Origin: Zootoca vivipara
Lineage: Eukaryota
Direction of reading: 5' to 3'
Length of the DNA: 64,000 bases
Assembly: GCF_963506605.1 (NCBI RefSeq)
Contig: NC_083292.1
Span: 39,742,001-39,806,000, forward strand
The notes below the pieces were generated by a model. The model made no database searches and was not told the DNA's origin. It saw only the letters and a program-made list of their open reading frames with translations. The position numbers and the translations under genes were made by a program. Below, piece after piece: positions 37,729-61,106 of this stretch (its first letter is position 1; every line of letters starts with the position of its first letter).

Positions 37729-40700
37729 CTATAGCAAGAGAATTGTTATGGTGAGGAACAAGATGCCCATAGCCATGACAGCCACGGAGACCTCTGGGAT
37801 CCGGCCGCTGTTGAGGGTGACTTTGAAGGCCGTGATTTCCTCTTGGTAACCTTCTTCTCTGGAGGTGCACTTAAAGACCCCCTGGTCCATCGGGGTGCTC
37901 TCCCCGAAGCGGAGAGTGCAGGACTGCTCGTCCATGGAGCATGGGTATGTCTTGTCATCTTTGACCCAGGTGTAGATGGCGTGGTGAGACCGCAGAGGGC
38001 AAGGCAGGTAGATGTAGCCAGTGCGATCTACACTCACTTTCTTGAGAGCCTCCTGGGCTAGCTTTTCTTCAAAGGTCAACATTTAAAGAGAGAGAAAGAG
38101 AAAAAACAGAGGAGAAACAATGTTTAGGTTTGTTTGCAGGTTCAGCTACGGCTCCTCCTCCAGAAGGCCCTCAGAAAGTTGCTCTGAAAGGAAGGCAGCC
38201 TTCAGTTGGATAAAGGTTCCCAACCCCTGTTCTAGAGAATTGGCACCCATGTTGAACTTCACTTACCATCAAGACATTTAACAGAAACCAAGCCTCGCCT
38301 CACTTAAGGCCAGTGGGACTGCATTGAAACAGCAGTTTATTCCATTTCCCCATTATATTTGAGCTTTCAAGTGATGTAAAAGCCACTTAATGGAAACCTA
38401 ATGGAATATAGCACGTGCTCAGCCTTCATTTCCTTGTTTTCCAATTCCAGAAAAAGCTCATTTTGCAGCCCACTGCACCCAGAAGATCGCAGGAGTAAAG
38501 TGACCAAATGTAGAGCAGTATGCTAGCACTCAGTTCTTTCCTGAGGTTTCCATGGAGGAACAAAAGCACACATGTGCAGAAAGGCTGCAAGAGTAGTGGT
38601 GTTGTTCATTGTATCACATCACGCCCACTGGTGTGAATGCAATTTAGCATGACATGCTGATACATTGGTAAAAAAAGCCACGGTTCCATAACACAACAGG
38701 TGCTGTGTAGAATCACAGAACTGTAGCATTGAATGAGACCCAACGGGTCATTTAGTCCAACACCTTGCATTGAATGCACTGCGAAAGGAACATTAGAAAA
38801 CAGGACGCAAGCACTAGCATTATAATCAGGAAAACTAATACAGTATTCTCCCCCTCTGAATACAGCCTAGGTCTAGTCCTGCTCTTTTGGCATCAGCAGC
38901 AGAGAATAAATCTTTGGTAGCTAATTGTTTCAGTCCTTGGGCCAATCAAACCTGTATTGGAATTACCTGAGGGTTCAGGGAGAAGAGGGTTGTTAGAAGC
39001 CTCAAGTAAAAAGAAACCCAGGCTTTTCATTTCCCCATCATCTGTGACCCTTTAAAGACAACCCAACCCAGCCGTTTTGCATCCACAGGCCTAAAAGGTT
39101 TCTATGCTGCTTCGTCTTACCTTCAGTGTTTTCACACATGGAAGCGGTGCTCGATGAATCTAGGTTCTGAAGCAAGCTGTTGAAGGAAACATACGGTGTA
39201 AGACGAGCCCAGCTGGAACACACCAATGGGTTGGACTAGATGATCCTCAGAGTCCCTTCCAGGGACTCAGCTACGTTAGTCAAAAACCAACGCTTTGAAT
39301 GCATGATAAACATGCAACACCATGAAGGCGACAGCTCCACCCTTGTGTTTGAGGGTTTATTTAGTTCCAGGCATCAGGTACTCAGAGGTACAAATGGACC
39401 AGGAGTTAGAATGGATAAATATGTCAATTTTGTTTTCGTATCTCCCTTTTCTACACTGAAGTTCTCCACATTTCCATATCATCTTGTGTTTTTCTTAAAA
39501 CAAGTCCTCATGAAAATTTAGCAGGGTTTCAGTGGAAATTCTTCCTAATGGACACGTTTTTGGGTACAATTTTGCCAAACACCCTTGCAAACACCCCCCC
39601 CCCACTAGTCTGGAGGAGCCATCCGTTTCAATAGATCAACTTTGAGTATCATTTAATTGGATACAACGTCACAGGAAAATGCAGCAATTAGACTGAAGCA
39701 ACATGTGGACTATGGGGAGGAGGTGCTTTGGAAAGTCGATTTATCGGGATGAGCCACCCCAAAATTCCTTCCCCTTTTGATTCTGGGCCAGACCTGCCAG
39801 TGGAGTTACTGTCTTGGGAGACGGCGGAGCAGGTCTTCTGTTCCCCGTCCCACCCACAATATGGGTCACGAGCCAGTATACACTTCCAGCAGTTTTCCTT
39901 GTACTGGTCGCAGTCCGCCAGCAGCAGGCGCACCACCTCGAACTCGGTGCTGGCGTACAGGTGGCCCTGCCGGAGAGAAGATGGATTAGAGCCAAGGGCC
40001 GGAGAAAGGAAGGAAAAAGAGCTGCCTGCGGGGGACCCCACCCATTGCAAGGAAGAGAGGATCGTAAGATGCTCCCCTAGTTTGGGAAACTAAGATGGAT
40101 CACTGAAAAAGGGATTTTTTAAATTTTCTTTTCTTTTCTTTTTTAAAAAGCAACCCTGCCAGGCTGTTTGTTTAGTTTTGGGGAGTAAGACGGGGAGAAA
40201 ACATTCTTGCACTTGCCCAACAGTGCCGTTTGTCTGCCCTCTTACCGAATCGCCGTCCAGGATCATAGAAGAGACAGGGGCTTCCTTCTTGAAGGGACTC
40301 AGCTCGGCAACAATCACCGTCTGGTCTTTGCTTCTCAGCACCTTGTGGATCTTCCCTTTTGCTGCGGCACCGAGAGAAGGAGAGGAGGAATTCGTGTTCA
40401 TAGGAAGCTGCCTTATACCGAGTAAGACCATTGCTCCATCTACCTCAGTCCTGTCTACACTGACCAGCAATGTGGCCCTCTGGGTTTTCCAGCCAGGAAT
40501 TTCTCCCAGATGCCAGGGATTGAATTTGGGTTTCCTCCTCCTCCTCCTCAGAATCAGACCACATTCACTCTGTGCATTTAAAGTACTGCAATACTGTACC
40601 AACTTAACCAGTTGTGGCTGGCCGCCCCAAAGAATCCCGGGAGCTGTAGTTTGTTAAGGATGCTGAGAGTTGTTAAGAGACCTGTATTCTCCTTGTAGAG

Positions 40701-43700
40701 CTACTATTGCTAGTCATTCACCAATCAATACCTCTTTCCAGGGAACTCTGGGAATTGTTGCTCCATGAGGGGAACATTTTTTTTTGGGGGGGGGGGGTCC
40801 TAACAACTCTCAGCACCCTTAAGAAACCACAGCTTGAATAACTCAGAGAAGCTATGAGCTATGCCATGCAGGGCCACCCAAGATGGACAGGTCATAGTGG
40901 AGAGTTTTGACTAAACGTGATCCACCTGGAGAAGGAACTGGCAAGCCACTCCAGTATCCCTGCCAAGAAAACTCCATGGACAAAGACAACAGGCATATAA
41001 AAGTTATGACGCTGGAAGATGAGCCCCTCAGGTCGGAAGGCGTCCAACATGCTACTGAGGAAGAGCGGAGGACAAGTACAAGTAGATTCAGAGCTGATGA
41101 AGCGGCTGGGCCAAAGCCGAAAGGACGCTCAGTTGCGGATATGCCTGGAAGCGAAAGGAAAGTCTGATGCTGTAAAGAAAAATATTGCATAGGAACCTGG
41201 AATGTAAGAACCATGAGTGGAGGTAAGCTGGATGTGGTCAAAAATGAGATGACAAGAATAAATATCGACATCCTGGGCATCAGTGAACTAAAATGGAAGG
41301 GAATGGGCGAATTCAGTTCGGATGACTATCATATCTACTACTGTGGGCAAGAATCCTGTAGCAGAAATGGAGTGGCCCTCATAGTCAACAAAAGAGTGGC
41401 AAAAGCTGTAATGGGATGCAATCTCAAAAATGACAGAATGATCTCGATACGAATCCAAGGCAGACCTTTTAACATCACAGTAATCCAAGTTTATGCACCA
41501 ACTACCGGTGCTGAAGAAAATGAAATTGACCAATTCTATGAAGACCTACAACACCTTCTAGAAATGACACCAAAGAAGGATGTTCTTCTCATTACAGGGG
41601 ACTGGAATGCTAAAGTAGGGAATCAAGAGATAAAAGGAACAACTGGCAAGTTTGGCCTTGGAGTTCAAAATGAAGCAGGGCAAAGGCTAATAGAGTTCTG
41701 TCAAGAGAACAAGCTGGTCATCACAAACACTCTCTTCCAACAACACAAGAGACGACTCTACACATGGATATCACCAAATGGACAGCATCGAAATCAGATT
41801 GATTATATTCTCTGCAGCCAAAGATGGAGAAGCTCTATACAGTCAGCAAAAACAAGACCTGGAGCTGACTGTAACTCAGATCATCAGCTTCTTATAGCAA
41901 AATTCCAGCTTAAACTGAAGAAAGTAGGAAAAACCACTGGGCCAGTAAGATACAATCTGAATCAAATCCCTTATGAATACACAGTGGAAGTGAGGAACAG
42001 GTTTAAGGATTTAGATTTGGTGGACAGAGTGCCTGAAGAACTATGGATGGAGGCTCGTAACATTATACAGGAGGCAGCAATGAAAACCATCCCAAGGAAA
42101 AGGAAATGCAAGAAAGCAAAATGGCTGTCCAACGAGGCCTTACAAATAGCGGAGGAGAGGAGGCAAGCAAAATGCAAGGGAGATAGGGAAAGATACAGGA
42201 AACTGAATGCAGATTTCCAAAAAACAGCAAGGAGAGACAAGAGGGTCTTCTTAAATGAGCAATGCAAAGAAATAGAGGAAAACAATAGAATGGGGAAAAC
42301 CAGAGATCTGTTCAAGAAAATTGGAGATATGAAAGGAACATTTCGTACAAAGATTACCATAATCAAGGACAAAAGTGGTAAGGACCTAACAGAAGCAGAA
42401 GACATCAAGAAGAGGTGGCAAGAATACACAGAGGAATTATACCAGAAAGATATGGAGGTCTCGTACACCTCAGGTAGTGTGGTTGCTGGCCTTGAGCCAG
42501 ACATCTTGGAGAGTGAAGTCAAATGGGCCTTAGAAAGCATTGCTAATAACAAGGCCAGTGGAAGTGATGATATTCCAGCTGAACTGTTTAAAATTTTAAA
42601 AGATGATGCTGTTAAGGTGCTACACCCAATATGCCAGCAAGTTTGGAAAACTCAGCAATGGCCAGAGGATTGGAGAAGATCAGTCTACATCCCGATTCCA
42701 AAGAAGGGCAGTGCCAAAGAATGCTCCAACTACCGCACAATTGCGCTCATTTCACACGCTAGCAAGGTTATGCTTAAAATTCTACAAGGCAGGCTTAGGC
42801 AGTATGTGGACCGAGAACTCCCAGAAGTGCAAGCTGGATTTCGAAGGGGCAGAGGAACCAGAGACCAAATAGCAAACATGCGCTGGATTATGGAGAAAGC
42901 TAGAGAGTTCCAGAAAAACGTCTACTTCTGCTTCATTGACTATGCAAAAGCCTTTGACTGTGTCGACCACAGCAAACTATGGCAAGTTCTTAAAGAAATG
43001 GGAGTGCCTGATCACCTCATCTGTCTCCTGAGAAATCTCTATGTGGGACAAGAAGCTACAGTTAGAACTGGATATGGAACAACTGATTGGTTCAAAATTG
43101 GGAAAGGAGTACGACAAGGTTGTATATTGTCTCCCTGCTTATTTAACTTATATGCAGAATTCATCATGCGAAAGGCTGGACTAGATGAATCCCAAGCCGG
43201 AATTAAGATTGCTGGAAGAAATATCAACAACCTCAGATATGCAGATGACACAACCTTGATGGCAGAAAGCGAGGAGGAATTAAAGAACCTTTTAATGAGG
43301 GTGAAAGAGGAGAGCGCAAAATATGGTCTGAAGCTCAACATCAAAAAAACCAAGATCATGGCCACTGGTCCAATCACCTCCTGGCAAATAGAAGGGGAAG
43401 AAATGGAGGCAGTGAGAGATTTTACTTTCTTGGGCTCCTTGATCACTGCAGATGGTGACAGCAGTCACGAAATTAAAAGACGCCTGCTTCTTGGGAGAAA
43501 AGCAATGACAAACCTAGACAGCATCTTAAAAAGCAGAGACATCACCTTGCCGACAAAGGTCCGTATAGTTAAAGCTATGGTTTTCCCAGTAGTGATGTAT
43601 GGAAGTGAGAGTTGGACCATAAAGAAGGCTGATCGCCGAAGAATTGATGCTTTTGAATTATGGTGCTGGAGGAGACTCTTGAGAGTCCCATGGACTGCAA

Positions 43701-46700
43701 GAAGATCAAACCTATCCATTCTTAAGGAAATCAGACCTGAGTGCTCCCTGGAAGGACAGATCGTGAAGCTGAGGCTCCAATACTTTGGCCACCTCATGAG
43801 AAGAGAAGAATCCTTGGAAAAGACCCTGATGTTGGGAAAGATTGAGGGCACAAGGAGAAGGGGACGACAGAGGACAAGATGGTTGGACAGTGTTCTCGAA
43901 GCTACGAACATGAGTCTGACCAAACTGCGGGAGGCAGTGCGAGACAGGAGTGCCTGGCGTGCTATGGTCCATGGGGTCACGAAGAGTCGGACACGACTAA
44001 ACGACTAAACAACAACATATCTTTTTATTCTAAGCATGTGAGCATGCCCTCTTTTAAAAAGTATTTTTTTATATATTCATCATAACTTTCCCATTCGCTT
44101 CTTAATTTTTGTTTCGGTTGATTTCTCAAGGCTACTGTCAGCTTGGCCATTAATAAATACTCACTAAGCTTGTTTATCCACTCTTCTTTTGTTGGTATTT
44201 TGGATGTCTTCCAATATGTAGCTATTAGAACCCTGGTTGCTGTGCACGCATACAAGAAGACTGTCTTATTCTTTTGGGGGATCTCTTCACTTAATAAACC
44301 TAATAGGTAGATCTCTGGTTTTTTCTTTATCGATTTTTTCATCATTTTCTTTAATTCTTCATGAATCATTAACCAAAACTTTTTTATTTCTTGACACATC
44401 CACCACATATGTATAAATGTGCCAGGTTCCCCATTGCATCTCCAGCATAAATTATTTTTTAATTTATATACTTTGGCCATCTTTACAGGTGTTAAATACC
44501 ACCTAAAATACATTTTGATAAAAATTTTCTTTTATATTATAAGAAGCCGTAAATCTTATATCCTGCTTCCACAATTTCTCCCATTGATCAATTTGTATTG
44601 TCTGACCGAGATCCTGGGACCATTTAATCATAGATTCTGTCGTCTCTTCTTGAAATAAATCCCACCCCAGTAGTAGACTATATGTTCTAGATAGCAGATT
44701 GCTTTTATTTTGAATGATTTCTCTTTCAAATAGTGAATCTTCTTTTGCAAAACCTATCTTTTTATCTGCCCTAAATATATTGACCAACTGTATATATTGC
44801 CAATTACTGATACCATAGCATTTTAATTCTTCATATGGCTTTAATTTATACCCCTCATGGTGCTCTTCTATTAATTGTTTATATACAGGCCATTTTATCT
44901 CAGTAGTTAATTTTTTACGAGCATAAGCCTCTATGGGAGAGATCCACAACGGCGTTTTCAATTCAATATACCTTTAATATTTGACCCATACCTTGTATAA
45001 TGCCCCTCTTAGTATATGGTTGGTGAATTCTTTATTTGTTTTAGCTTTTCCATAATTCAAGTATGCGTGCCAACCATAGCTAGAGTTAAAGCTCTCAAGA
45101 TCCAAAATTTTTATATTTTCTAATTTCATCCAATCCCGCATCCATATTAAGCTGCTTAAAATTGTTATAAGAATTCTAAGGTCTGAAATATAAAGTAAAT
45201 GTCCATAAATGTCCAAAAAATGGCATTATCAGGTATCCTGGCAGACAGAGAGAAGCAACACCAGAAGGAAGAAAAAACAAATAGGCTTCTCCACTGTGTT
45301 CAGCCTCCTTTCTTCGGCCTTACCCCGCCCCCTCTGGCCAGGCGTCCTTTGTCCTACCTGGCTGGGTGACGGGTCATAGGCCAACTCACACAGGTGGGTG
45401 GCACAGGCCAGGTAAGCCCCGTGCGGCAAGTTATCCCTTTTTTTAAGGGATTTTCCCTTATGCTGAATAGGCTTCCTCGCGAGAAAAGGGAAAACTTGGC
45501 AGCTATGCCGTGCGGTGTCGCAAATCCTGCCCACCTGAGGGGAGGGGTGAGGGCGGATACTCTCAAATTTCTGCTGGAGACTGCCTCCTTCTGCAATGTA
45601 TATATGATGTTTTGGGGGGTGGATTTTTGCACATCATTGTTCAGGGTTCTCTTCCCTCCTGCGTGTGGTGAGTGGGGACCCTGTTGCAACAGTTTATTTC
45701 CTTTAATAAAGATCAGGCTTACTAGCCACTTTGCTTCTCAATATACTCTGGTTGGCGTGTTATTTTTCTCCTACCGATAGGGAACCCACTTAAGGACTAT
45801 ACGGGTTCTGGAATACCCCATAAGGGAAAGGGAGCAGATTTTTCTTATAGCACAATGATCCCCACGGACAAGCAGTTCCACAACAAAGCAAGAGTGTGGT
45901 AGTCTCCCCTCCGTGGCCGCCAGCCACGGCAAGCTCACCTGTTCCCAGGAAGAGGACATCGCGGGAGATGCCGGCAGCATCCTGCACGCTATCCACCACT
46001 ACCTGAGTGTACGTGTCATTGTTCTGGAGGATGTAGAGGGCATGCTCTTCATCCGGGTAGATGACCGAGTCTATTTCGGGGTGGTCCTTAATGAAGGTCA
46101 GGGTAGCTTTGGGCAACGGAGGATGTCCATCTGGTGGCACACACTGAGCAGGAGGAGAGAAAGGTAGACGGGGATAAGTCAGTGCGTGTGTACGAGAAAT
46201 GAATATATATATAAAGATTCCTGCTTTTTTAAAAAATCCAGAGGCCCAGGAGTGACCTTACCATGCCGGGTCTGGGCAGGGGGATGGGGCCGGTGACCCC
46301 CTTGAACTTCGAAGTCTTGAAAATGGTGCTGATCCGGTTCATCGAGTATGAACAGACAGCAGATGAACCCCTAAGGGGGGGGGAACCAAAAACACTGGTG
46401 TGATGTCAGTATTACAGCCGACTGACCATTCCAGGAAGCCCAAAATAACAAATGCAAAATCACAGCCTCAGCTTTTCTCCTCAGTGAAAGTCTTATGGCA
46501 TTAAAAGGAATCTGGAATTTATTTATTTTAGGAAAAAGTAACACATGAATTGAAGGCCTCTAAAGGACAGGAAGATTCAGGCCATTTTTACTCAGTTGTG
46601 GTGGTATTTTATTCCATATAGCTTAATTTCAGATTTACAGGTGTACCCCCCATGCTGGCTAGAGAAATATGGGTGTCATTATTTTAGATTGGGTGTTATC

Positions 46701-49700
46701 ATTCAATATGTTTAGGTTTTGCATGCCCTTGCCTTTAGTTAGATGTATTATTGAATTTTTATTACCTGTCTTCCTGGTTCTATAATAATTTGAAAAGTAT
46801 TGTGTGTTTTTTTTAAAAAAGAAGAACAAAGGGTGCAAGTTAGGAACAATTGTAGCAGGTCTAAGAGTTATTACGACAACATGTAAATATTGCCACCTCT
46901 TCACTCTTCAAGATACTTGAAAGGGCTTCTAAGAATTGATCAGGAAGTTGTCACATAATAAGAGGATAAATCATGTGTTCTTTAGCCCCCCTCATAAAAT
47001 CTGCATGGAAGCCTGTTTCAAGCTCTGTATCATTGGCTCCCCCTTGGTCTGATAAACTCATCCCCAGTGCTCTTTACTCTATAAAAAGCATTTTTCAGAA
47101 CAGCAGTTTGCACGACCCACTAAGGAAGATAACACAAGGACATTTGAAACAGTAAGAGTTAAATGCACATTTATTCAAAACCGAGTCAAAACTATTTCGT
47201 TTAATCAATTCAACAAAATCGATGAACTTGATCTGGTCATGCCAGAGGTTTCCAAAGCCTGATAGTCACTTGCACCCCCTAGCTGCCCCCTTGCCCTTCC
47301 CATGGCAAATCTACCCCCACACAGGGGGCGCTACCACCCATTTTGGGAACCACTGCTCTAAATGATGGAAAGGAGAGTACCTCTCTAGGGCTGTCTTAAG
47401 CATATAGAGCACGAGGTGCAAAAATCTCCCAGGTTGCCCAGTCCCACCCACAGGCAGGCTCTTCCCCGGACTCAACTCTTGGGCAACGGACTCATGGCAT
47501 GGTGCCCCTGAGAGCCCGGTGCCCGGGTGCCCTGCACCCCTAGCGCATATGGGTAAGATGGCCCTGTACCTCTCCACGAAGGGAACTTCGCCAAATCTGT
47601 TGCAGAGGATCTCAGAGGGTAGAAACCTTATAGCACGCTCAATGCGACTTAGGTAGGCTCGCCTTGATATTGGAGCTGGGTGGAATCCTGCCCTGCCCAA
47701 CTCACCATTCACTGGAGAAGACGCCGTACAGTACCGTCTCGCCCTTACCGCCCTCCTTCCTGGAGACGAAGGCGTCCTGGAGGCGGTGGAAGCGCATGGG
47801 CTCGGTGGGGTGTCCACACACCAGCCTCGCCTTGAGGAAGGTACTCCAGGAATCTGCCATGACAGGCCTGCCGCCTTGGTCCACCTGGAAGGGCAGAAGA
47901 CCTGGTGTCATGGATGGGCTGGATCCATGCAGAGGAGAGGAGGGAGGGAGGCACCAGCTGGAGAAGAAGACTCAGATCTCTGGGAGCGGTGGTGGGACGA
48001 CAATGGGTGGTCACAGGGAGCAGACTGGGAGGAGGTGGACGAGTAACAGGGTTTGGTGAGCAGGAGGAGGCTGTGGCAGAGAGAAACCCAGACTCCGAGG
48101 CAGAAGCGGAGGCTGGAGAGGAGTGGGGCCAGGAGACAGAGAGGAGCCCAGCTGGTGAAGAAGCGAGGAGAAGACATTCCAAGTGTCTCTATTTTCCAGG
48201 GACAGTCCGGGATTTACAGAATCCTGGTTTCTGATTTGATCCCGGAATGTCCCTTTTTCCTTAGGGCGTTCCTATTTTCATCAGAGAAATGTTGGAGGGT
48301 ATGGAATAGAATGTCCCTATTTTCATCTGAGAAATGCTGGAGGATATGCCAAGGACTCTCCCACTCCTGCTGTGAACAGGTCTCCCAGAAGAGGGATGAA
48401 GAGGGTGGAGCAGAGACAGACAAGGCAAGGAAGTCTCAGATTGCTTGGGAAGGACCCAGGGGGAGGAACAGTCTTATGCCATTGTGGGAAGGCAGGGACC
48501 TTTAGTCCTCGCAACTGCCTCATAGGGGCAAGACTACAATTCCCCCCAGCCCCTGCCCATGGGCCATGTAACTGGTCCGCGCCCCATCCCTCCAGGTGGA
48601 AACTTCTTCCCAGTCGTCGCTGCCTCGCTCTAACCTTGCAGACACGCCCGAGCCCAGCTTTGTAAGGCTCCTCGTCCAGCCCGGCCGACTGGTTGACCTC
48701 ATTGTAGAAGAAGAAGATTTCGTCTTTGCTCTGGTCCTTCTCTTCCAGCAGGGCGGCGCCAACAAACTCTGCTCCTGCTGGGGCGGGAGAGAATTGAAAT
48801 GGTACAACTGGTATTTAGCACCTGTGCTTGGAAAAACACACACAAGAGGAGTCCTTCTCAAAGGATAGACTGGATCTACATATGGAGGCCCCATTATTGC
48901 AGCCAACAGCTGATGGGAAGCCATGTATTGTGGGGGATTATTCCTGTTGACCATGGATCTAACCAGATTCCAAAAGCCCTCTGCAAGCTCTCCGTTCATA
49001 AGCAAGAGCAATCACTACAGCAGTACCTTGGTTTGCAAACAGTCTGGTTTGCATACGTTTTGGATTACAAACACGTCAAACCCGGAAGTGCATGTCATGG
49101 TTTGCAAACTTTTTTGGGATTACAACCCAATTTTTTTGGATTACAAGCAATTTTTTGGGGGGGGAGGCCCCATTGGCAAAAGTGCGCCTTAGGTTACAAG
49201 CTCTTTTGGTTTACAAACGGACCTCCGGAACGGATTATGGTTGTAAACCAAGGTACCACTGTACTTCCCCTAAGAGCCAGTGGGACAGGAAGGAACAGAC
49301 AAGCAAAAAGGGGGTGTTGGGAAGAGAGACAGAGAGATGGGAAAAGGGTGGTACCATGTTTGTCCTTGGGCCTGTGGACCAGGACAGGTTACTTGCAAAC
49401 GAATGTGGCTCTCAAAATGGCGGGGGAAGAAGCATTTCAGAGGAGAGCTGCAAAGATATTACCGGTATCTTTATGAGCAACCATGGCCGATGGCTAATAT
49501 TGCCTTTCCCCCATTGATGGGGCGGTTGATGGGTGCCATTTTGTGGCCCTGCCCATTTTCTGCCCTCTTAAGGAGGGCAGCCGTTTTGTGCTATGCCAAG
49601 CCTCCACGGCAACCATTTTGTCTTTTGCACAGACATTCGCAGCATTTCCTCAGAATTACCAAAGGTCAGAGACCCCAGTGGGGTTTACAATTATCCAGCC

Positions 49701-52258
49701 CCAGCCTTCATTACTTGCAGACGATGTTCTATTTATTTTTATGTATTTCTTTCACAGGGTTTCCATACCGCCTAATGACCTCTGAGCTGTTTTTCATAAA
49801 AATGCCAATAAAAGCAAATGTTAAAAAACAAGCCATTTGACACACATGGCTTCTCCCTTGCAGAAGAGTTGTGAGAACTGTAGTTTGCCCTTCACAGAGC
49901 AATGCTTCCCACCATCCTTAACATACTGGCCGGTGAGCACTCCAGTTGGAGAACAGCCTTTACCAAAGGTGTCATGGGCTTGGAAGAAACTCCATCTCAG
50001 GACGCAAGGGAGAAATGTGCTAAGAGGAAGGCACGCTTGGCAAATCCACACCGTGATCAACTCCCACCTGGAAACCAATGTCCCCATTGTGGAAGGACGT
50101 GTGGATCCAGAATTGGCCTCCACAGTCACTTACGGACCCATTGTTAAAATCGTTTTTATGGAAGACAATCTTACTCGGCTACGAGGGATCGCCGAAGAAG
50201 AAGGAGGAGGAGGAGGAGGAGGAGGAGGAGGAGGAGAACATACTACAGCTCCCAGAACACTTTGGGGGAAGTCACATGCTTTAAACGCATGGTTTGTAAG
50301 CTGCCCCTGGTTGATCCAAAATTAACCAAAATGTAAGTAAAAACCAGGAGTTTTGAGACATATACAAAGGGATGGAAGGGAGATAGAGAGAGTTTCTTAC
50401 GGGGCAGCCAGCTGTTTTCCGTCTTCAGCCCCTTTTTCTTCCCATAACTTCTCTGGATGCTGCTTTTCGCGCCAGACAATGCAGAATAAAGGGTGTCTTC
50501 TGAAATTGGAACATGCCGGGGAAGAAAAAAATGTGAGTCGCCCATTGCAAACTTCGAAATTATGAGAGCCGAAACATGCACTGCCTTCTTCCTGACTCCT
50601 GATGCTTGTGATCACACTTATAAACTTACATATTTCTTCCACCATGAGGACTAGAATTTTATATCAGTGCAATTGACTCCATAAAGAATTAGTGGGACGG
50701 ACAGGAGCCCTTTGTACAGTGCCGGATTTACGTATAAGCTAAACAAGCTGTAGCTTAGGGCCCCACTCTCTTGGGGCCCCCCAAAAAATTTAAAGGAAAA
50801 AAACACCTGGATGTACATTTCCAAACTATAAGATAAAAAGCAAATAAAATAAAACCTGCATACAGCAACCGTGTTTTGTGTTGTGTAGGCTCCTATGATG
50901 TAAGTCATGGGCCACGCCTGCTTGCCTGTTCCCTCAAATATCACTGGTTTGCTCCTTTCTATATATAGGGTGCCTACATTCTGCATGGACTGGTTGCAGG
51001 GCAACATGTGCAAATGGCTTGAGGTACCTATTAGGTCCATCAATTACCTTATAGCATATATTCAACACAAAAAACAGCGACAATTTGTTGTTGGCAAAGG
51101 ACAGCTGGACATAGAAAGGGCCCCATTACCTCCAGTAGCTTAGGGCCTCATCAAACCTAAATCCGGCCCTGCCTTTCTGAACCCAGGACCACCCAAGACA
51201 TTTTGCCGCTTGAGGCAAAGCAGAAAATTCGAAACCCAAAATCTGAGCAGAACAAAACCAGCCAGGGAGATCCCTCTGCCCCTTTCCTTACTCCATACCT
51301 ACAGTGATGACCACGGCGTTTTGGGATGGTGATGCCGGAGAGATGTTTTCTCCTGAGGCGGTGATATTCCGGCCTTGCTTGTCCGTTTGGAAGGTCGTGG
51401 TGTTCACCTTGGAGTAAAGAGACAAAAAAGAAAAATGAATGCATTTTGATATATCAACTGAACTTGTGGTCTCTCGATTCTCATGTGACTTCCTGCCACA
51501 TTTTTTAAAAATTCTTTTTACAGATAATTTCACTGCTTTATTCTTTTGTAAACTGCTCTGAGGGTAGGTTTTCCCACCCCCAATCAAACAATATATAATT
51601 TTAATGAAATGAAAATAGGTAAAACACCTGCAGATTCCATCCACCACTCTGATATTTCTCAAGCTCACCAGAAACCAGCACTTGGGAGAAGCCGCGTTGG
51701 TTCCGCAGACCATCATTTTGTTGTCCAGCTTCTCGATCACTTGGATGAAATTATCGCAGTCCTCCTATGCGGAAAGGTGATGGAGAGGGGAGAGGAAAAA
51801 CACAGAAGCATATTTGTTTATTTTAAAATTCATGACCCACACTTCCATGGCATCCTTCAAGATGGTTTCAATAAAACCGATCCATTGATAGTTGTAAAAC
51901 ATAAAACATCAAGAAAGCAGCAACGTATATTTGTTAGAGCAGGGGACAGCTCTACTCTGTCAAAAGGTGATCTGTGCTCCTCTGTGAATTTAAAAATTGC
52001 CGCTGTTTCTCTTGGAGGGAAGTTGTAGGGAAATACCTTTGTTCCTCAAGCCCCCCCCCCTGCCATTGATAACCTCATGCAGCTGGAAAACATGACTTTG
52101 CATTTTGCACACACACACACTTGAAATATTTACATTTAACATTTTCAGTGCAATAAATGCATTTAAAAACAAAACAAAAAACCCACTCATTTAATGCATA
52201 ACAGTTCAAACTTACTACTAGGAAATAGGGAAGGGGGATACAGAAAACAGAGAAATAA

Positions 52259-52300: not shown

Positions 52301-55300
52301 CAAATAATATAGTACTGTACTACGGAGCATGAGTTGATTAACCATGCCCTCCTTGTCACTAGGGGGTGCCAACTATTTAATTTAATGCAACCTTTCTAGC
52401 CCTAAGGGTTGGGTGGGTTATATCGTAAAATGCATATGCGCACACCCATCCCAAAACAGGCGCCCAGAGTGGCTGTGGAGGTCCTGATCCCAGGAGATTT
52501 ACACAATGGTCTGTGCTTGCTGTTGACTTAACGTCTGTGAAGGGTCCTCAACAAAGCTGGAGGCCGGGAGTTCTGCCAGGGTGGCACCTAAAAGATGCAT
52601 TGCGCAGACTGAGACCTGGGTCAGCGGTAGCTTGATAGGGCCAGCTGGGATCCTATTGGCTCCTTGTGTCATCATGTGATCCCTGCTGGCGCTGCAGTAC
52701 CCCCTCCAGCCACTGATGGCGCTGCAGCACAAGTGGGGCAGGAAGTTGAGACCCCCCCATAGTCCAGCCTCACTTAGGAAACATTTTGTAGACCACTGAT
52801 CCAGGTCCACACAACTCCCTCCTTCCTCCTTACCCATGCTGCTCTGGGCTTGCTTTTACAGTCCTTTTCCGCTTTCTCATCAGCCTTCAGGGGGACCTGG
52901 AGCAAGGAGAGAGACCCTGGTGAGGAAACTGGGGGGCGCCAACCCTATGCCCCCACAAAAATTGGAAGGCTATTTCGCCCCGTGCTGGTCCCGAGATGCA
53001 GCTCAAGAGAAAGAGGACAGCAGGATAGGAACCCAGCAATTTGCCTTCTACTGAGTCGGAAGTTTTGTTTACAAAGACTGGGAGCATCTCTCCAGGGTTT
53101 CGGAAAAGGGAGATTCCCAACCCTGCCTGGGGAAGCCAGGGATTGAACCTGCGACGTTCTGCAACCAAAGCAAGTGCTCTACAGCTGAGCTACATCCCTT
53201 CCCTGGTTGTTCGTTCCAGCACAACGGACACCTCCTAGGGAGAAACTTGCTCCAGCAATGGTCAAAAGTAACCTAAGCCCAAACCTAAGGCCAATGGCCC
53301 ATCTAGTCCAGCATCCTGTTCTCACAGTGGCCAGCCAGCTGCCCCAAGGGAAACCCAGAAGCAGGATTTGAGCCCAAGAGTAACTGTTCCCTAGCTGTGG
53401 CAGCTGGGATTCAGAAGCATCGCTGCGTCCAGCTGTGGAGACAGAGCACAGCGGTCAGGCCTAGTAGCCACCAATGGGCCTCTCCTCCACGGATTTGTGT
53501 AACCCTCTTTTAAAACCATTCAGATTGCTGGCAATCCGTTCCTCCTGTGGAAGCGAGTCCCACAGATTAACTGTGCAACGTCAAGCTCTGTACCTCTTTC
53601 GGAGTGACTTCAGAGTCCGTAAACGTCAAGAGCAACAGCCTCCCCCGGCCTCCGACGAGGACCTGGTTGGAGCCGGGCTCGTGGAACATGGCTGCCGGTC
53701 TCTCACGTTCACCGAAATTGAACCTCTGAGCATCTGAAAGGAGAGGGGATCATATTGGTCATTGTCACCCGCCCACCAACCTCCATATCTAAAATATTTA
53801 ACAGAATAGCATGAACTAGACCAGCAAATCAACTAGACCAGCAAATCAACATAGAATTCATTCACCATCCTATTCTCAGCTACGTCAACAGTAGACTAGC
53901 ATTTGGATCAAGGGATATCATAGTACTGCTCTGTTCTGCCTTGGTTAGACCCCACCTGGAACACTGTGTCCAGTTCTGGGCACCACAGTTTAAGGAGGAT
54001 ATTGACAAGGTGGAACCTGTACAGAGGAGAGCCTGGAAACCAAGCCTTATGAGGAGTGGTTGAAGGAGCCCAGATAAGAGAAGACTGACAGGAGATATGA
54101 TAGCCATCTTCAAATATCTCAAAAGCTGTCTCATGGAGGTTGGAGCCAGTTTGTTTCCTCCTGTTCCAGATTTTAGGACCTAAACCAACAGCTTAAAGTT
54201 ACAAGAAAGGAGATTCCAACTAAAAATCTGTCAATAAGAACTGTTTGACAGTGGAACGAACTCCCTCAGAAGGTGGTGGACTCTCCTTGCATGGTGGTTT
54301 TTAAGTAGAGGTTGGATGGCCATCTGTCATGGATGCTTTAGTTGAGATTCCCGCATTAGAGGGGTCCCTTCCAATTCTACAATTCTATGATCACCATCGA
54401 CTTTAAAATCGCCTTCTAAACCACCGCCCCAAGGTGATTTGCGCAAATGGTAACTAAAAACAACCAATACATTTGCAACAGGGCTAAAACCCTAACAAGA
54501 CCCATTTGTCCAGCTAGGAAAGTCCGTTGGAACCAAATTGCCTTCAGATGTTTCCAGAAAGTGCAGATCTAGTGGGCCGCTGTCCTGCCTCGACAGGAAT
54601 GCTATTCCGCAGATCAGGGGCAGCTACAATGAAGGCCCTGCTCAGAGTTACTACTGAGCAGGCTTCTGAGATCTTTGCGACTTGCAGGAGAGACTCTCCC
54701 ACGAACCTCAGCGATCTGCTGGGCGTGCAAGGGATACAGTGGTCTTTTGAAATGTTAACATCCTGTCCCCACCAGCATGGGGGTTTGGAGCCTGAATGAA
54801 TCTGGTCTCCTTGGAGGAAGGAGGCGCGCATGTAGAGGAGCTGTTTGGTTGCACAGAGCGAAGATTTGCATTTGTTGCTCCGCCCCCTCTGTGCTGCCAC
54901 TCGGCACATGGACCCCCAGACAGGCTGCCCGGAAGGGAATGCGGCCCTCAGACTGGAAAAAAGATTCTGCTTTCTCTCTTCAGAGAGAGAAAACGGGAAC
55001 TGGCTTCCACTTAAGCGCACGTACAATGGAACGAGCTCCATTCTGCTGCCTCATCTGTCCAGGGAGCTCCTCTTCCAGGGCAGCGATATTAATGTGGGTT
55101 AATGCATAATACATAGGCTTAAAAAGTAAAATCAGGCGGAGAAAGGGCAGAGGAGAACACTGAACAGTGGGTGGCGCCACAGAAACCAAGAGCGGCAGTG
55201 GGCTCTTTACAAAAATATACAATTAAAAATAAACCCATCCTGTTTCAATTACACCCCATGAGCAGGGCTGGAGAAGGGGACCTAGAGGGCCACCCTTGGC

Positions 55301-58300: not shown

Positions 58301-61106
58301 AGATGGGGCCAAGCAGATGTTCTGCCCCAGAGCTGCTGGTCTCCCAACATCAAGATGGAAACCTCTCCAAATCATACATCTGTGAATCACAAGGGTGAGA
58401 TAAGCCAAGAGGTCTTTCCCCATCCACCCCAGATGTCTATGGGTCCAGGAAAAATTGTGGGGGTCTTGGATTAGGGGTGGAGGAAACCCACCTCCTACCA
58501 GATCAGACTATTTGTCTGTCTGGAGCAGGTTTGTCCGCTCTGAGTGACAGCATCTTTCCAGGATCTGAGGCAGGGGGAAAACAAAACCCACTTTCATCTG
58601 CTAACCTGATTTTTTTTTAAAAAACTGGAGATCCCGGGGATTGAACCTGCAGATGCTCTACCCCTGAACTACGGTTTCCCCAGCAAGTTCTCCTGAATCA
58701 TTCAACGGAACTGGAAGTCGGTCTCACGATGACACAGCCCTCTCCTTTCTCTGAAATGAAAGAGACTCCTGCCTCTGAAGTTTAAATGATTTTCATTGTG
58801 AACATGGATGTTTTCATAACTATAAAATGCACAGTACATTAGGAAGGTATATGTATCTTGAAAAGCAACAATGACATTTCATAAACAAACAATTAGGCTT
58901 CGGACGTTCCCTATATTTAGAGCCCAGTGCTGGCAACTGTAGTTTAAGGGTGCAGGGAATTGCAGTTTGGTGAGCGATCAACTACAGTTCCCAGGATTCT
59001 CGAGTGGTGGGAAGTCATGTGATTTAAATTTAGGGTGTGGAGGTAGACTTAGTCCCTGCTGTACGCAATGGTGATGCTTAATCCTAGGATCACTCGGAGA
59101 AGCTTGCAAACAAGTTTGGTCCCCAATTGTTTGTCCTGCAGCATCCCTGATTGCCTATCACCACCAATTTACAGAGTTCAAAGCACTCATCACTATCACT
59201 ACGATGCCTGGTGTTCAGACTCCTTTAGACTTTTGCCACTGAGCTCATGGCTCAGCACAGGATCAGAGGAAGCGGCCTTACACCAGACAGAGCTTTACTT
59301 CATCTAACTCAGAAGTGCCTACACTGACTGGCAGCAGCTCTCCAGGGTTTCAGGTTGGGGTGGGGGTGGGATCTTTCCAAGCCCTACCGAGAGATGCCAC
59401 GGCTTGAACCTGGGACCTTCTGTAAGCCAGGCAGATGCCCTGCCACTGAGCGATCTGCCTTCCCTGCTCCGGACTAGTAAGGACCACACCTGAAAACTGG
59501 AAAAGTGATTTAAGGAAGGCGTTCATTCCAAATCTTTCAACCAACCCTAGATCTGTTTTTTAAAAACCAAAAACCTGTCTTCGTCTTATGTAATATTCCT
59601 AGCCTGTTAGGCCTCCCTCTCTGTGCTGCTTTGGAAACCCAGGATTCTAGCTGCTCAGATAGACTGTGCCTGCTCAAGAAGCTCTGGTGCAAATCGATTA
59701 AAAAAACCCCACCCTTCACTGCTGTCTAGTGACACACGCACATCGCCCGCATTTCATCTCTGCTCTGGCAGCAGGATGATCTGCCTGGATGTCAGATCTG
59801 CCCCCCTCCCCAGACAGCTGCATCACACGGCAAGCAAGATTTGGCTCCAGCAAGAAAGATGGGCACCGCTGGGTCTGGCAAAACAAAACGTCTTGACCCA
59901 GGGAGTGGGCAGATGGCATTATAATTGCCTTGGAAGGAGTGCGCTTGGAATGCACTTTGCTGTGCCAGGCTGTAGCCACCAAAAGGAGGTCAACAACAAC
60001 AACAACAACAACAACAACTGCCTTTGCTGCCCCATCCTGTGACCTGACTGCTTTCCTTGGAAGTTGCAGTCTGGCTTCGTCCAAAACAGACTTTTGTCTG
60101 GAGTGATCTGGCAACGGGGCAGGGGGGTATTGAAGTTCTGAGTTGGCTCATTGGCAGAACACCTGCCTTCCTTGCAGGCAGAAGGCCCCGGGTTCAATCC
60201 CCAGAGGCAGGGCTGGGAAAGACTTCTGGTCTGGAACCCGGGAGAGCAGCTGCCAGTCAGTGTTGGCAATGCTGAGCTCGAGAGACCAAAGAGCCTGACT
60301 CGGTAAAAGGCAGCTTCTCATGTGTTGCCTTTGGCGCTAGGCATCCTCAGAGCGGACCCAATGAAACCAATCCTTTCAATGGGTCTACTCTGAGTAGATT
60401 GGGCTGCCCATCCTGCCCACAAGTGAAATCCTTCACTATCAAGAGATGAAAACAAGTGACTGAGCCAGACCCGCTCCTCCCTGATCCTCTCCAAAATGTG
60501 CTTAATGATAAACAGGTTTCCGTGGCAACTGCCTCCTCCTCCTCCTCCAACATGCCTCTGTGCAAAAGGAATGCATAACAGCTTAGGTTATATAGATCTG
60601 TTTTTCTACCGAGTATCTCAAAGACAGGTTGGGGGGACGGGACCCACTAATGGACCCTGACCATGAAAGGATCAGCAGACCCCCAATTTTCAGGCTGGTG
60701 GGGTGAGACCCTCCAGCCTCCCCAACAAATGCAGAGCGGCCACCTAGGATGTCCTAAACTCCTCTCTGCAAATCTGCAAATAGTTTCTCGTGCAGAAAGC
60801 TGAACAGAAGCAATTCTAACCTGTTCCTATTTCCAATCTCCCGCAACTACCATGCATTCAATAAATTTAAAAGCTATCATATATACACCCCCCCCTTTTT
60901 TGAGGGGAGGGAGTGTTTCTGGTTAGGTCATCTAAGATGAATGCAAAATCGGCTTTTTTTTAAAAAAAAGAAATTACAAGCACTATTATAATAAAAAACA
61001 GTCCTTTCACAACCAGCTCACCTTGCAGATTGAGCTTCAGCCTGGGCACCTTTTGGGAGGAGGCGAGGCAGAGGATGGAGAGCAGGTAAAAACGGAGGCC
61101 TCTCAT
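37729..61106 (-). CDS. Class-7 (semaphorin-7A-like) semaphorin: signal peptide, Sema, PSI, Ig-like domain, GPI-type tail; about 635 aa
   Basis: 14 exons: 61106-61022, 53733-53594, 52896-52834, 51764-51669, 51407-51299, 50499-50401, 48774-48635, 47884-47706, 46370-46262, 46143-45939, 40361-40246, 39966-39794, 39176-39121, 38066-37729. All GT-AG, phase-consistent, 1908 nt with no internal stop. Motifs: FHEPGS..V.VGGRG, DCDNFI, VCGTNA.SPKCW, DQGG...WSTFLKARLVC, SAVCSYS, PRPGMC, CILARDPYCGWD, YLPCPLRSHHAIYTW. Ends in a hydrophobic tail with no cytoplasmic part. Confidence 0.9.
40833..44016 (+). mobile_element. RTE-BovB LINE, near full length, antisense within semaphorin intron 10
   Basis: 931-aa ORF with APE endonuclease (GISELKW, QVYAPT, GDWNA, QIDY, SDH) and RT (KAFD, GVRQG, YADD); ends VTKSRTRLND followed by a (CAA)n tail. 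Confidence 0.96.
41213..44008 (+). CDS. BovB endonuclease/reverse transcriptase ORF (N-terminal part cut off by an in-frame TGA at 41165-41167)
   Basis: ORF-track protein of 931 aa with intact APE and RT motifs; same frame as upstream ORF 40907-41167. Confidence 0.85.
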   Translation: MSGGKLDVVKNEMTRINIDILGISELKWKGMGEFSSDDYHIYYCGQESCSRNGVALIVNKRVAKAVMGCNLKNDRMISIRIQGRPFNITVIQVYAPTTGAEENEIDQFYEDLQHLLEMTPKKDVLLITGDWNAKVGNQEIKGTTGKFGLGVQNEAGQRLIEFCQENKLVITNTLFQQHKRRLYTWISPNGQHRNQIDYILCSQRWRSSIQSAKTRPGADCNSDHQLLIAKFQLKLKKVGKTTGPVRYNLNQIPYEYTVEVRNRFKDLDLVDRVPEELWMEARNIIQEAAMKTIPRKRKCKKAKWLSNEALQIAEERRQAKCKGDRERYRKLNADFQKTARRDKRVFLNEQCKEIEENNRMGKTRDLFKKIGDMKGTFRTKITIIKDKSGKDLTEAEDIKKRWQEYTEELYQKDMEVSYTSGSVVAGLEPDILESEVKWALESIANNKASGSDDIPAELFKILKDDAVKVLHPICQQVWKTQQWPEDWRRSVYIPIPKKGSAKECSNYRTIALISHASKVMLKILQGRLRQYVDRELPEVQAGFRRGRGTRDQIANMRWIMEKAREFQKNVYFCFIDYAKAFDCVDHSKLWQVLKEMGVPDHLICLLRNLYVGQEATVRTGYGTTDWFKIGKGVRQGCILSPCLFNLYAEFIMRKAGLDESQAGIKIAGRNINNLRYADDTTLMAESEEELKNLLMRVKEESAKYGLKLNIKKTKIMATGPITSWQIEGEEMEAVRDFTFLGSLITADGDSSHEIKRRLLLGRKAMTNLDSILKSRDITLPTKVRIVKAMVFPVVMYGSESWTIKKADRRRIDAFELWCWRRLLRVPWTARRSNLSILKEIRPECSLEGQIVKLRLQYFGHLMRREESLEKTLMLGKIEGTRRRGRQRTRWLDSVLEATNMSLTKLREAVRDRSAWRAMVHGVTKSRTRLND
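44017..45220 (-). mobile_element. L1-type LINE ORF2 C-terminal fragment with frameshifts
   Basis: ORFs 44974-45216, 44503-44961 and 44025-44513 (MYFRWYLTPVK...CWRC...FIHMWWMC); same domain as 6143-6862. Confidence 0.85.
49018..49261. mobile_element. Tc1/mariner-type MITE
   Basis: TA-CAGCAGTACCTTGGTTTGCAA ... TTGTAAACCAAGGTACCACTG-TA. Confidence 0.8.
49925..50237 (+). mobile_element. 3' end of an RTE-clade LINE with a C-terminal C2H2 finger and (GAA)/(GAG)n tail
   Basis: CPHCGRTCGSRIGLHSHLRTHC*, a short UTR, then a purine triplet tail at 50194-50237. Confidence 0.7.
50717..51171. mobile_element. Non-autonomous DNA transposon (hAT-like); partial second copy at about 62038-62147
   Basis: TIRs CAGTGCCGGATTTA / TAAATCCGGCCCTG; TSD-like CCTTTGTA/CCTTTCTG. 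Confidence 0.75.
52261..52299. repeat. (GT)n microsatellite
   Basis: About 19 perfect GT units. Confidence 0.95.
53885..54390 (+). mobile_element. CR1-type LINE 3' fragment
   Basis: Degenerate ALVRPHLEHCVQFWAPQF, GDMIAIFKYLK and 3' end TTCCAATTCTACAATTCTATGA. Confidence 0.8.
57713..57754. repeat. Compound (AAC)n(AC)n microsatellite
   Basis: Seen directly. Confidence 0.9.
60142..60320 (+). mobile_element. tRNA-derived squamate SINE; representative of many degenerate copies (e.g. about 4005-4150, 4160-4360, 8650-8820, 40405-40530, 59270-59460)
   Basis: A/B-box-like head (GGCTCA...GGCAGA...GGTTCAATCCCC) and shared body GCTGCCAGTCAGTGT...CTGAGCT...GGCAGCTT. Confidence 0.6.

What the first reader, a model, noticed from the sequence alone, without database searches (positions are those of the whole stretch)
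37729..61106. Intact SEMA7A-like gene at a non-SEMA7A locus: candidate second class-7 semaphorin lost in mammals
Seen: a clean 14-exon, about 635-aa reading frame with signal peptide, Sema, PSI, Ig-like domain and a GPI-type tail (…TLNSGRIPEVSVAVMAMGILFLTITILLL*), directly upstream of TDRKH. Known: SEMA7A is the only GPI-anchored semaphorin in mammals and lies on human 15q, whereas MRPL9-OAZ3-TDRKH-LINGO4-RORC lies on 1q21 with no semaphorin between TDRKH and LINGO4. The two regions share paralog pairs (OAZ2/OAZ3, LINGO1/LINGO4, RORA/RORC). Inference: this divergent protein is an old paralog, possibly a whole-genome-duplication copy of SEMA7A kept in reptiles, and so a largely uncharacterised guidance/immune ligand.
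Basis: partly seen in the sequence, partly recalled or inferred. Interest (0 to 1): 0.85.

Follow-up and report, generated by a model that had tools for sequence, protein, structure and literature searches.

The report
Second class-7 semaphorin gene in lizard
This lizard gene is a real, spliced and well-conserved sister of SEMA7A that sharks, bony fishes (zebrafish included), amphibians, turtles, crocodilians and lizards have kept but that is missing from annotated mammal and bird proteins, so textbooks that list a single class-7 (lipid-anchored) semaphorin are incomplete.

Summary
On the minus strand, 14 GT-AG exons (61106 to 37729) encode exactly two RefSeq proteins of Zootoca vivipara, "semaphorin-7A" isoforms X2 (635 aa) and X1 (636 aa). 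Their architecture is signal peptide, Sema, PSI, Ig and a GPI-type tail. TDRKH, OAZ3 and MRPL9 lie downstream.

Contigs from two public runs of the same species join exons 10 to 14 at exactly these boundaries, so the gene is spliced and expressed.

The same species also has a canonical SEMA7A on another chromosome-scale contig. In a maximum-likelihood tree, class 7 is monophyletic (100/98) and holds a canonical SEMA7A clade (100/99) and a separate clade containing the window gene (100/100). That second clade runs from sharks to reptiles, and no bird or mammal appears in it. It evolves about 1.5 times slower than SEMA7A.

Nearly all its members keep the GPI-type tail. The mammalian RGD motif is absent (KVD here).

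Origin by whole-genome duplication fits the tree but was not shown.

The gene model is already in databases, under the same name as its paralog. I found no paper that recognises it. Zebrafish carries it as an "uncharacterized protein".

The parts
61022..61106 (-). Exon 1: start codon at 61106 and the signal peptide (MRGLRFYLLSILCLASS...)
   Evidence: Exact match to P0359 residues 1-28, with a GT donor. In the AlphaFold2 model the N-terminal helix 2-17 has low confidence, as expected for a signal peptide.
53594..53733 (-). Exon 2 (Sema domain, blade 1)
   Evidence: Exact match to P0359, AG/GT sites.
52834..52896 (-). Exon 3
   Evidence: Exact match to P0359, AG/GT sites.
51669..51764 (-). Exon 4 (conserved CGTNA...C.W motif)
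   Evidence: Exact match to P0359. It holds invariant C116, C125 and W126 of alignment A1.
51299..51407 (-). Exon 5 (three N-glycosylation sequons)
   Evidence: Exact match to P0359. Sequons at N130, N142 and N149.
50401..50499 (-). Exon 6
   Evidence: Exact match to P0359.
48635..48777 (-). Exon 7, with two acceptors 3 nt apart (48777 for isoform X1, 48774 for X2). Its end together with the start of exon 8 encodes KVD at the place of the human RGD.
   Evidence: Both chains match RefSeq isoforms P0365 and P0359 exactly.
47706..47884 (-). Exon 8 (conserved W.TFLKARL.C core of the Sema domain)
   Evidence: Splice sites read directly in the sequence. This exon was the query that retrieved the family.
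46262..46370 (-). Exon 9
   Evidence: Exact match to P0359.
45939..46143 (-). Exon 10 (Sema domain, blades 5-6)
   Evidence: Pfam Sema E 4e-14. Exact match to P0359. RNA contigs run on from exon 11 into the last letters of this exon (loose end at 40364).
40246..40361 (-). Exon 11 (end of the Sema domain)
   Evidence: Exact match. Joint 39965|40245 in contigs of runs X1 and X2.
39794..39966 (-). Exon 12 (PSI domain)
   Evidence: Pfam PSI E 2e-8. Joints 39176|39794 and 39965|40245.
39121..39176 (-). Exon 13 (linker between PSI and Ig)
   Evidence: Exact match. Joints on both sides in X1 and X2.
37729..38066 (-). Exon 14: Ig-like domain, predicted GPI attachment region (LN-S-G, about residues 608-611), hydrophobic tail and TAG stop.
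   Evidence: Weak Pfam Ig matches. The model shows Ig strands at 531-609 and a helix at 615-634. Contigs read through the stop into the 3' UTR.
36080..37728 (-). Probable 3' untranslated region. It is continuous with exon 14 down to 37398. Further contigs reach 36080 but are not joined to it.
   Evidence: Contig pieces of X1 and X2 (table 8).

Best explanation
This is the Zootoca vivipara copy of a second class-7 semaphorin gene, an ancient paralog of SEMA7A.

Shown here: the gene is intact, spliced and transcribed. Its product has a signal peptide, a seven-blade Sema propeller, a PSI domain and one Ig-like domain. It belongs to a clade that is sister to, and distinct from, the canonical SEMA7A clade. 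That clade arose before cartilaginous and bony vertebrates split. It is kept in sharks and rays, ray-finned fishes (including zebrafish), coelacanth, caecilians, salamanders, turtles, crocodilians and squamates. It is absent from annotated bird and mammal proteomes. It evolves about 1.5 times more slowly than SEMA7A, which indicates strong purifying selection.

Inferred: the C-terminal signal (small residues N-S-G, a short spacer, then an 18-20 residue hydrophobic end with no cytoplasmic residues) is cleaved and replaced by a GPI anchor, as in SEMA7A. The protein then sits as a homodimer on the outer leaflet and signals in trans to a plexin. Plexin-C1 is the obvious candidate. Signalling would not go through the RGD/KGD integrin motif, which it lacks.

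Also inferred: the duplicate dates from the early vertebrate genome duplications. This copy would lie in the 1q21-type block (MRPL9-OAZ3-TDRKH) and SEMA7A in the 15q-type block.
For: - Gene model: the 14 exons reproduce P0359 and P0365 exactly.
- Domains: Sema E 3e-42 and PSI E 7e-7 on the full protein. The AlphaFold2 model has pLDDT 86 and pTM 0.86. The best solved folds are SEMA7A 3NVQ (TM 0.79/0.85) and SEMA4D. By sequence, 3NVQ scores 308 bits, SEMA4D 222 and SEMA3A 185.
- Transcription: contigs of two runs from two studies of the same species join 38066|39121, 39176|39794 and 39965|40245, which are introns 13, 12 and 11. They continue into exon 10.
- Paralogy: the careful IQ-TREE tree of 45 proteins gives class 7 100/98, the window clade 100/100 and the bony-vertebrate SEMA7A clade 100/99. 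The 75-row tree has the same layout.
- Both genes occur in Zootoca, Pogona, Anolis, Varanus, Notechis, Paroedura, Alligator, Chelonia, Microcaecilia, Ambystoma, Latimeria, Acipenser and Astyanax.
- No bird or mammal is among the 120 best relatives of the Pogona ortholog. These go down to 492 bits, whereas alligator and turtle score about 840-850.
- Zebrafish protein P0430 lies inside the clade.
- Rate: path lengths between the same species pairs are 1.5-1.7 times longer in SEMA7A.
- Tail: 151 of 154 near-full-length clade members end in an uncharged hydrophobic run (median 24 residues) preceded by a small-x-small triplet.
- The window protein has KVD where human has RGD.
- Neighbours TDRKH and MRPL9 are confirmed by Pfam.
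Against: - The GPI anchor is predicted from simple sequence rules only. No dedicated predictor or biochemical test was available.
- Receptor binding was not tested. The plexin-contact residues of SEMA7A could not be retrieved because the paper is not held.
- Raw RNA-seq runs X19 and X20 of the species showed almost no reads over the gene in the 6% sampled. Expression is therefore low or tissue-restricted, and the tissue is unknown.
- The run type of X1 and X2 is a guess ('RNA?'), although intron-less GT-AG joints are hard to explain otherwise.
- Absence in birds and mammals rests on annotated proteins, not on genome searches.
- The position of a cartilaginous-fish pair (Mustelus P0075, Narcine P0113) relative to the two clades is unresolved. 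The number of ancestral class-7 genes is therefore not settled.
- Synteny outside this window was not examined.
Confidence: 0.82

Rival explanations
1. The paralog is ancient but arose by a small-scale (segmental or tandem) duplication followed by relocation, not by the early vertebrate whole-genome duplications.
For: The tree only dates the split to before the shark / bony-vertebrate divergence. The extra cartilaginous-fish lineage is unresolved.
Against: The gene sits beside MRPL9-OAZ3-TDRKH. By general knowledge this is the human 1q21 block, whose members pair with genes on 15q (OAZ2/OAZ3, LINGO1/LINGO4, RORA/RORC, and also SEMA4A/4B and SEMA6C/6D). SEMA7A is on 15q24. In Rhinatrema, SEMA7A and SEMA4B share one contig.
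Confidence: 0.25
2. The protein is not GPI-anchored. It would be a type-I membrane protein whose C-terminal helix stays in the bilayer without a cytoplasmic tail, or it would be released as a soluble form.
For: Only rule-of-thumb sequence features were checked. The AlphaFold2 model draws residues 615-634 as a helix. Some canonical-clade proteins of coelacanth and sturgeon carry a true transmembrane helix plus a basic tail.
Against: The tail ends at the last hydrophobic residue with no stop-transfer charges. It is preceded at the usual distance by N-S-G / N-G-G / N-A-G. This arrangement is kept in 151 of 154 clade members. Human SEMA7A, with the same arrangement, is a known GPI protein (general knowledge).
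Confidence: 0.15
3. The gene is simply the SEMA7A ortholog moved to a new locus, or a recent reptile-specific copy of it.
For: NCBI names the product 'semaphorin-7A' in Zootoca.
Against: The same species has another 'semaphorin-7A' (P0302) that is 45% identical to human SEMA7A. The window protein is only 31% identical to both. The two fall in different clades with full support, and the window clade includes sharks and fishes.
Confidence: 0.01
4. It is a class-4 semaphorin that lost its cytoplasmic tail.
For: Exon 10 alone scores better to SEMA4D (E 3e-6) and SEMA3A than to human SEMA7A (E 0.19). The SEMA4D fold matches the model nearly as well as SEMA7A does.
Against: The full-length protein scores 308 bits to SEMA7A against 222 to SEMA4D. 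The tree separates class 7, including this clade, from four class-4 proteins at 100/98. The exon-10 result is explained by the fast evolution of mammalian SEMA7A.
Confidence: 0.02

Closest known systems
SEMA7A (semaphorin 7A, CD108, JMH blood group antigen), the canonical class-7 semaphorin
   Same: Same domain order: signal peptide, Sema, PSI, one Ig-like domain and a hydrophobic GPI-type C-terminus, with no cytoplasmic part. All 17 cysteine columns conserved in SEMA7A are also conserved in this clade. SEMA7A is the best solved-structure match by sequence and by fold. The two are sister clades within class 7. By general knowledge human SEMA7A also has 14 exons, like this gene.
   Different: Only about 31% identical to both lizard and human SEMA7A. 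It lies at a different locus, next to TDRKH. It has KVD instead of RGD/KGD at the integrin motif, and one extra conserved cysteine. It evolves about 1.5 times more slowly. It is absent from annotated bird and mammal proteins.
Class-4 semaphorins (SEMA4D/CD100, SEMA4B)
   Same: Sema-PSI-Ig ectodomain. TM-score 0.80 to SEMA4D 1OLZ. Second-best sequence match in the PDB.
   Different: Class 4 proteins have a transmembrane helix and a cytoplasmic tail and form the outgroup in the tree. This protein ends at the hydrophobic tail.
Viral semaphorins (vaccinia A39R, ectromelia EVM139)
   Same: Sema domain related to class 7. PDB matches of 90-92 bits.
   Different: The viral proteins are closer to mammalian SEMA7A (130-136 bits) than to this clade. 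They lack the PSI, Ig and anchor parts.
Zebrafish si:ch211-113g11.6, listed by NCBI as 'uncharacterized protein' (P0430)
   Same: Member of the same clade as the window gene, with the same length (632 aa) and the same tail type.
   Different: About 40% identical to the lizard protein. No publication on it was found.

Membership tests
Semaphorin superfamily | N-terminal Sema domain (seven-blade propeller) followed by a PSI domain | tested here: met
   Pfam Sema E 3e-42 and PSI E 7e-7 on P0359, and on single exons. The predicted fold matches solved semaphorins at TM 0.65-0.85.
Class 7 semaphorins | Groups with SEMA7A to the exclusion of other classes in a phylogeny | tested here: met
   Class-7 node supported at 100/98 and at 99 SH-aLRT. 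The outgroups were class-4 and invertebrate semaphorins only; classes 3, 5 and 6 were not in the tree.
Class 7 semaphorins | One Ig-like domain after the PSI domain | tested here: met
   Ig_2 and Ig_3 matches lie below the Pfam cut-off. The model has a beta sandwich at 531-609. The alignment to 3NVQ extends to residue 602.
Class 7 semaphorins | GPI anchor: C-terminal signal with no transmembrane-plus-cytoplasmic part | tested here: inconclusive
   The sequence features fit: N-S-G, a spacer, 18-20 hydrophobic residues and then the stop. They are kept in 151 of 154 relatives. No GPI predictor or experiment was available.
Class 7 semaphorins | Binds Plexin-C1 | not testable with these tools
The paper listing the contact residues is not held.
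SEMA7A orthologs | Falls inside the SEMA7A ortholog clade and is the only such gene in the species | tested here: not met
   It falls in a separate clade with 100/100 support. Zootoca has the true ortholog P0302 elsewhere.
SEMA7A orthologs | RGD (mammals) or KGD (most other tetrapods examined) integrin motif in the Sema domain | tested here: not met
   KVD in the window protein and in most clade members.
Paralog pair from the vertebrate whole-genome duplications (ohnologs) | Duplication node older than the split of cartilaginous and bony vertebrates | tested here: met
   The window clade contains sharks, rays and bony vertebrates and excludes the SEMA7A clade.
Paralog pair from the vertebrate whole-genome duplications (ohnologs) | The two copies lie in paralogous chromosome blocks in several lineages | tested here: inconclusive

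The most novel reading that the evidence does not exclude
The slowly evolving paralog, not SEMA7A, may keep the ancestral class-7 function. It may have its own receptor preference: a plexin interaction without the integrin route. Its separate losses in mammals and in birds would then go with a hand-over of that function to a fast-evolving SEMA7A. Zebrafish sema7a phenotypes would be partly masked by this unnamed gene.
Probability: 0.2. Interest if true: 0.7.

Novelty: new member of a known kind. Interest (0 to 1): 0.55.

Why it matters
Reviews list class 7 as holding one semaphorin (PMC10084454). A recent zebrafish study states that Sema7A is the only GPI-linked semaphorin and that the fish has a single sema7a gene (PMC11318972).

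The data here show a second class-7 gene, older than jawed vertebrates' radiation and under tighter constraint than SEMA7A. It is present in zebrafish, axolotl, Anolis and other laboratory species, and is hidden by inconsistent names ('semaphorin-7A', '-like', 'uncharacterized protein', si:ch211-113g11.6).

This matters in three ways. It affects how sema7a knock-outs in non-mammalian models are read. It affects orthology tables that may mix the two genes. And it fills the empty 1q21-type slot of class 7 beside the known SEMA4A/4B and SEMA6C/6D pairs. It is a gene-family addition, not a new kind of molecule.

Tried and rejected
No synteny in other species, no neighbourhood of the canonical gene and no ortholog coding DNA for dN/dS could be obtained.
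- The search of earlier findings gave nothing on LINGO4, TDRKH or other semaphorins in this genome.
- The Sema7A-PlexinC1 structure paper (PMC2936782) is not held. Contact residues were therefore not compared.
- Raw RNA-seq runs X19 and X20 gave only a handful of reads on exon 14 and no joints. They neither support nor refute expression in those unknown tissues.
- The strong read pile at 39228-39261 is a repeat with loose ends on both sides, not an exon.
- Exon 10 alone pointed to class 4 or 3. This lead was rejected by the full-length searches and trees.
- The bird protein P0079 (Malurus), hit by exon 8, is class-4-like and not a bird copy of this gene.
- The medaka ROR paper (PMC5553892) holds no synteny data of use.
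Searches used single exons by reference. For full-length work I used the database protein P0359, whose identity to the exons was verified exon by exon.
- Complex prediction was not used. No plexin sequence was available, and dimerisation was not in question.
Full report
**What is in the sequence**

The window has no masked stretches. Between 37729 and 61106 the minus strand carries open segments that Pfam recognises as Sema, PSI and Ig-like.

I searched single exons only, by reference. Exon 8 (47884-47706, splice sites read) was scored against 1.8 billion representative proteins. It found a 635-aa lizard protein at 74% identity, followed by class-7 and class-4 semaphorins. That hit is Pogona vitticeps "semaphorin-7A-like". 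Laid on the window with tblastn, it marks 14 exon blocks.

Among its relatives, the lacertid cluster holds two Zootoca vivipara RefSeq proteins. I walked the window exon by exon, requiring AG/GT sites and carrying at most the two letters of a split codon. The 14 exons encode P0359 (XP_034954982.1, 635 aa) without a single difference. With an acceptor 3 nt upstream at exon 7 they encode P0365 (XP_034954981.1, 636 aa).

I never built a joined spliced model. For every full-length analysis I used the database protein P0359, which the exons reproduce.

**Surroundings**

Downstream on the same strand are KH-domain exons (27529-30492) and Tudor exons (24304-24881), which identify TDRKH. A mitochondrial ribosomal protein bL9m exon (3211-3504) identifies MRPL9.

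Intron 10 holds an intact 931-aa LINE open reading frame with endonuclease and reverse transcriptase domains, on the opposite strand. The window ends 2.9 kb upstream of exon 1, so LINGO4 and RORC could not be seen.

**Is it expressed?**

Eighteen public runs hold part of the 3' stretch. I laid four runs on 35600-40500.

- Contigs of two runs of the same species, from two studies, skip 38067-39120, 39177-39793 and 39966-40244/5. These are exactly introns 13, 12 and 11, with GT..AG ends on the minus strand.
- The contigs then continue with letters that spell the end of exon 10. They also read through the stop codon into at least 330 nt of 3' UTR.
- The run type of these two is only guessed to be RNA. 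However, intron-less GT-AG joints at the annotated borders are what a spliced mRNA gives.
- Two deep RNA-seq runs from 2026, sampled at 6%, showed only a few reads on exon 14. Expression there is low, and the tissue is not known to me.

**What family, and which member?**

- Sequence: the full protein has Sema (E 3e-42) and PSI domains. Against solved structures it scores 308 bits to human SEMA7A, 222 to SEMA4D and 185 to SEMA3A.
- Fold: the AlphaFold2 model is confident (pLDDT 86, pTM 0.86). It superposes best on SEMA7A (3NVQ) and SEMA4D.
- Relatives of the window protein: a search with the Pogona ortholog lists squamates, turtles, alligators, caecilians, axolotl, coelacanth, sharks, rays, sturgeon, bowfin and many teleosts. 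They are mostly named "semaphorin-7A-like" or "semaphorin-7A". No bird or mammal is among the 120 best.
- Relatives of the canonical gene: a search with a caecilian "semaphorin-7A" lists the canonical SEMA7A of mammals, birds, turtles, crocodilians, amphibians and fishes. It also lists canonical SEMA7A of the very squamates that have the first gene, including Zootoca (P0302) and Pogona.
- Separate loci: in each lacertid the two genes lie on different chromosome-scale contigs, about 42 Mb and about 78 Mb.
- Identity: P0302 scores 602 bits to human SEMA7A. The two Zootoca proteins are 31% identical to each other.

**Trees**

A 75-protein tree and a 45-protein careful tree with bootstraps agree.

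- Class 7 is separated from class-4 and invertebrate semaphorins (100/98).
- The bony-vertebrate SEMA7A clade has 100/99 support.
- The clade with the window gene has 100/100 support, and inside it the branching follows the species tree from sharks to lizards.
- A pair of cartilaginous-fish proteins (Mustelus, Narcine) belongs to class 7, but its place relative to the two clades is unresolved.
- The zebrafish protein P0430, which NCBI calls "uncharacterized protein", lies inside the window clade. UniProt names several fish members after the zebrafish gene si:ch211-113g11.6.
- Between the same pairs of species, path lengths are 1.5-1.7 times longer in SEMA7A than in the window clade. The unnamed paralog is therefore the more constrained of the two. 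This also explains why exon 10 alone looked more like SEMA4D than like human SEMA7A.

**How it probably works**

Shown: a secretory-pathway protein with the Sema-PSI-Ig ectodomain of class 7. All 17 cysteine columns conserved in SEMA7A are conserved in this clade too, plus one extra, and there are six N-glycosylation sequons.

Inferred: a GPI anchor.

- The protein ends ...KVTL-N-S-G-RIPEVS-VAVMAMGILFLTITILLL. That is a small-residue triplet, a short polar spacer and a hydrophobic end without any cytoplasmic residue.
- Of 154 near-full-length clade members, 151 share this layout.
- Human SEMA7A, a known GPI protein, has the same layout.

Inferred by family: the protein is a homodimeric ligand for a plexin, with Plexin-C1 the first candidate.

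At the position of the mammalian RGD motif, non-mammalian SEMA7A mostly has KGD, whereas the window clade has KVD. An integrin route through that motif is not expected.

Orthopoxvirus semaphorins are nearer to mammalian SEMA7A (130-136 bits) than to this protein (90-92 bits). They do not derive from this clade.

**Origin**

The split predates the divergence of cartilaginous and bony vertebrates, which fits the early vertebrate genome duplications. The window shows the gene next to MRPL9-OAZ3-TDRKH.

By general knowledge that block is human 1q21. Its genes pair with 15q genes (OAZ2/OAZ3, LINGO1/LINGO4, RORA/RORC, SEMA4A/4B, SEMA6C/6D), and SEMA7A lies at 15q24.

Two same-contig pairs in the tables bear on this. 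In Rhinatrema, SEMA7A shares a contig with SEMA4B, which fits. In Cetorhinus, the window-clade gene shares a contig with a SEMA4B-like gene whose orthology is unresolved.

The whole-genome-duplication origin therefore stays an inference, at roughly two to one against a small-scale duplication.

**Novelty**

The gene model exists in RefSeq, UniProt and Ensembl-derived names, so the sequence itself is not new. What I could not find in the literature is any recognition of it.

- "sema7b" occurs once, in an unrelated review that I did not read.
- "ch211-113g11.6" occurs in no paper.
- The "-like" name appears only in passing in expression lists.
- The semaphorin evolution paper does not treat class 7 beyond one sentence.
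- A 2022 review lists "Class 7: 1 Semaphorin".
- A 2024 zebrafish paper states there is a single sema7a gene and a single GPI-linked semaphorin.

I rate it a new member of a known kind. It is of moderate interest: it corrects a textbook count and matters for work in fish, amphibian and reptile models.

Noticed in passing
window 41213-44008 (+): Intact 931-aa LINE open reading frame (endonuclease plus reverse transcriptase, Pfam E 1e-40). It lies antisense in intron 10 of the semaphorin gene and may be a recently active element.
   Followed up: partly
window 48774-48777 (-): Tandem acceptor (CAGCAG) at exon 7. The two sites give RefSeq isoforms X1 (636 aa) and X2 (635 aa), which differ over two to three residues at the exon 6/7 junction (..WLPPGAEF.. 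versus ..WLPRAEF..).
   Followed up: yes
window 39228-39261: A 34-nt stretch in intron 12 draws many RNA reads and contigs that run on into unrelated sequence on both sides. It is a dispersed repeat transcribed elsewhere, not part of this gene.
   Followed up: partly
window 44025-45216 (-) and 6203-6580 (+): Open reading frames that look by eye like C-terminal pieces of L1-type ORF2 (CWRC...H...W.C motif). Pfam gave no match for the first two pieces.
   Followed up: partly
proteins P0422 (Latimeria) and P0335 (Acipenser), canonical SEMA7A clade: These canonical-clade proteins end in a transmembrane helix followed by a basic cytoplasmic tail, not a GPI-type end. The anchoring mode of SEMA7A itself may therefore vary among fishes or isoforms.
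   Followed up: no
proteins P0075 (Mustelus) and P0113 (Narcine): A class-7 lineage of cartilaginous fishes whose position relative to SEMA7A and the window clade is unresolved. It could be the shark SEMA7A or a third old paralog.
   Followed up: partly
database names: Naming is inconsistent. Both Zootoca genes are 'semaphorin-7A'. In sharks the window-clade gene is usually 'semaphorin-7A' and the other lineage '-like'. In many teleosts both are 'semaphorin-7A'. The zebrafish protein is 'uncharacterized'. UniProt often says 'Semaphorin-1A'. Orthology-based transfers can mix the two genes.
   Followed up: partly
contig sizes: Rhinatrema SEMA7A and SEMA4B are on the same 83,996,221-bp contig. 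The Cetorhinus window-clade gene and a SEMA4B-like gene are on the same 7,994,003-bp contig. This hints at linked class-4/class-7 pairs in both paralogous blocks.
   Followed up: no
window 21300-31800 (-) and 3211-3504 (-): TDRKH exons (three KH-domain matches at 27529-30492, Tudor exons at 24304-24881, N-terminal membrane segment near 31700) and an MRPL9 exon. The order MRPL9, OAZ3, TDRKH is as in human 1q21.
   Followed up: partly
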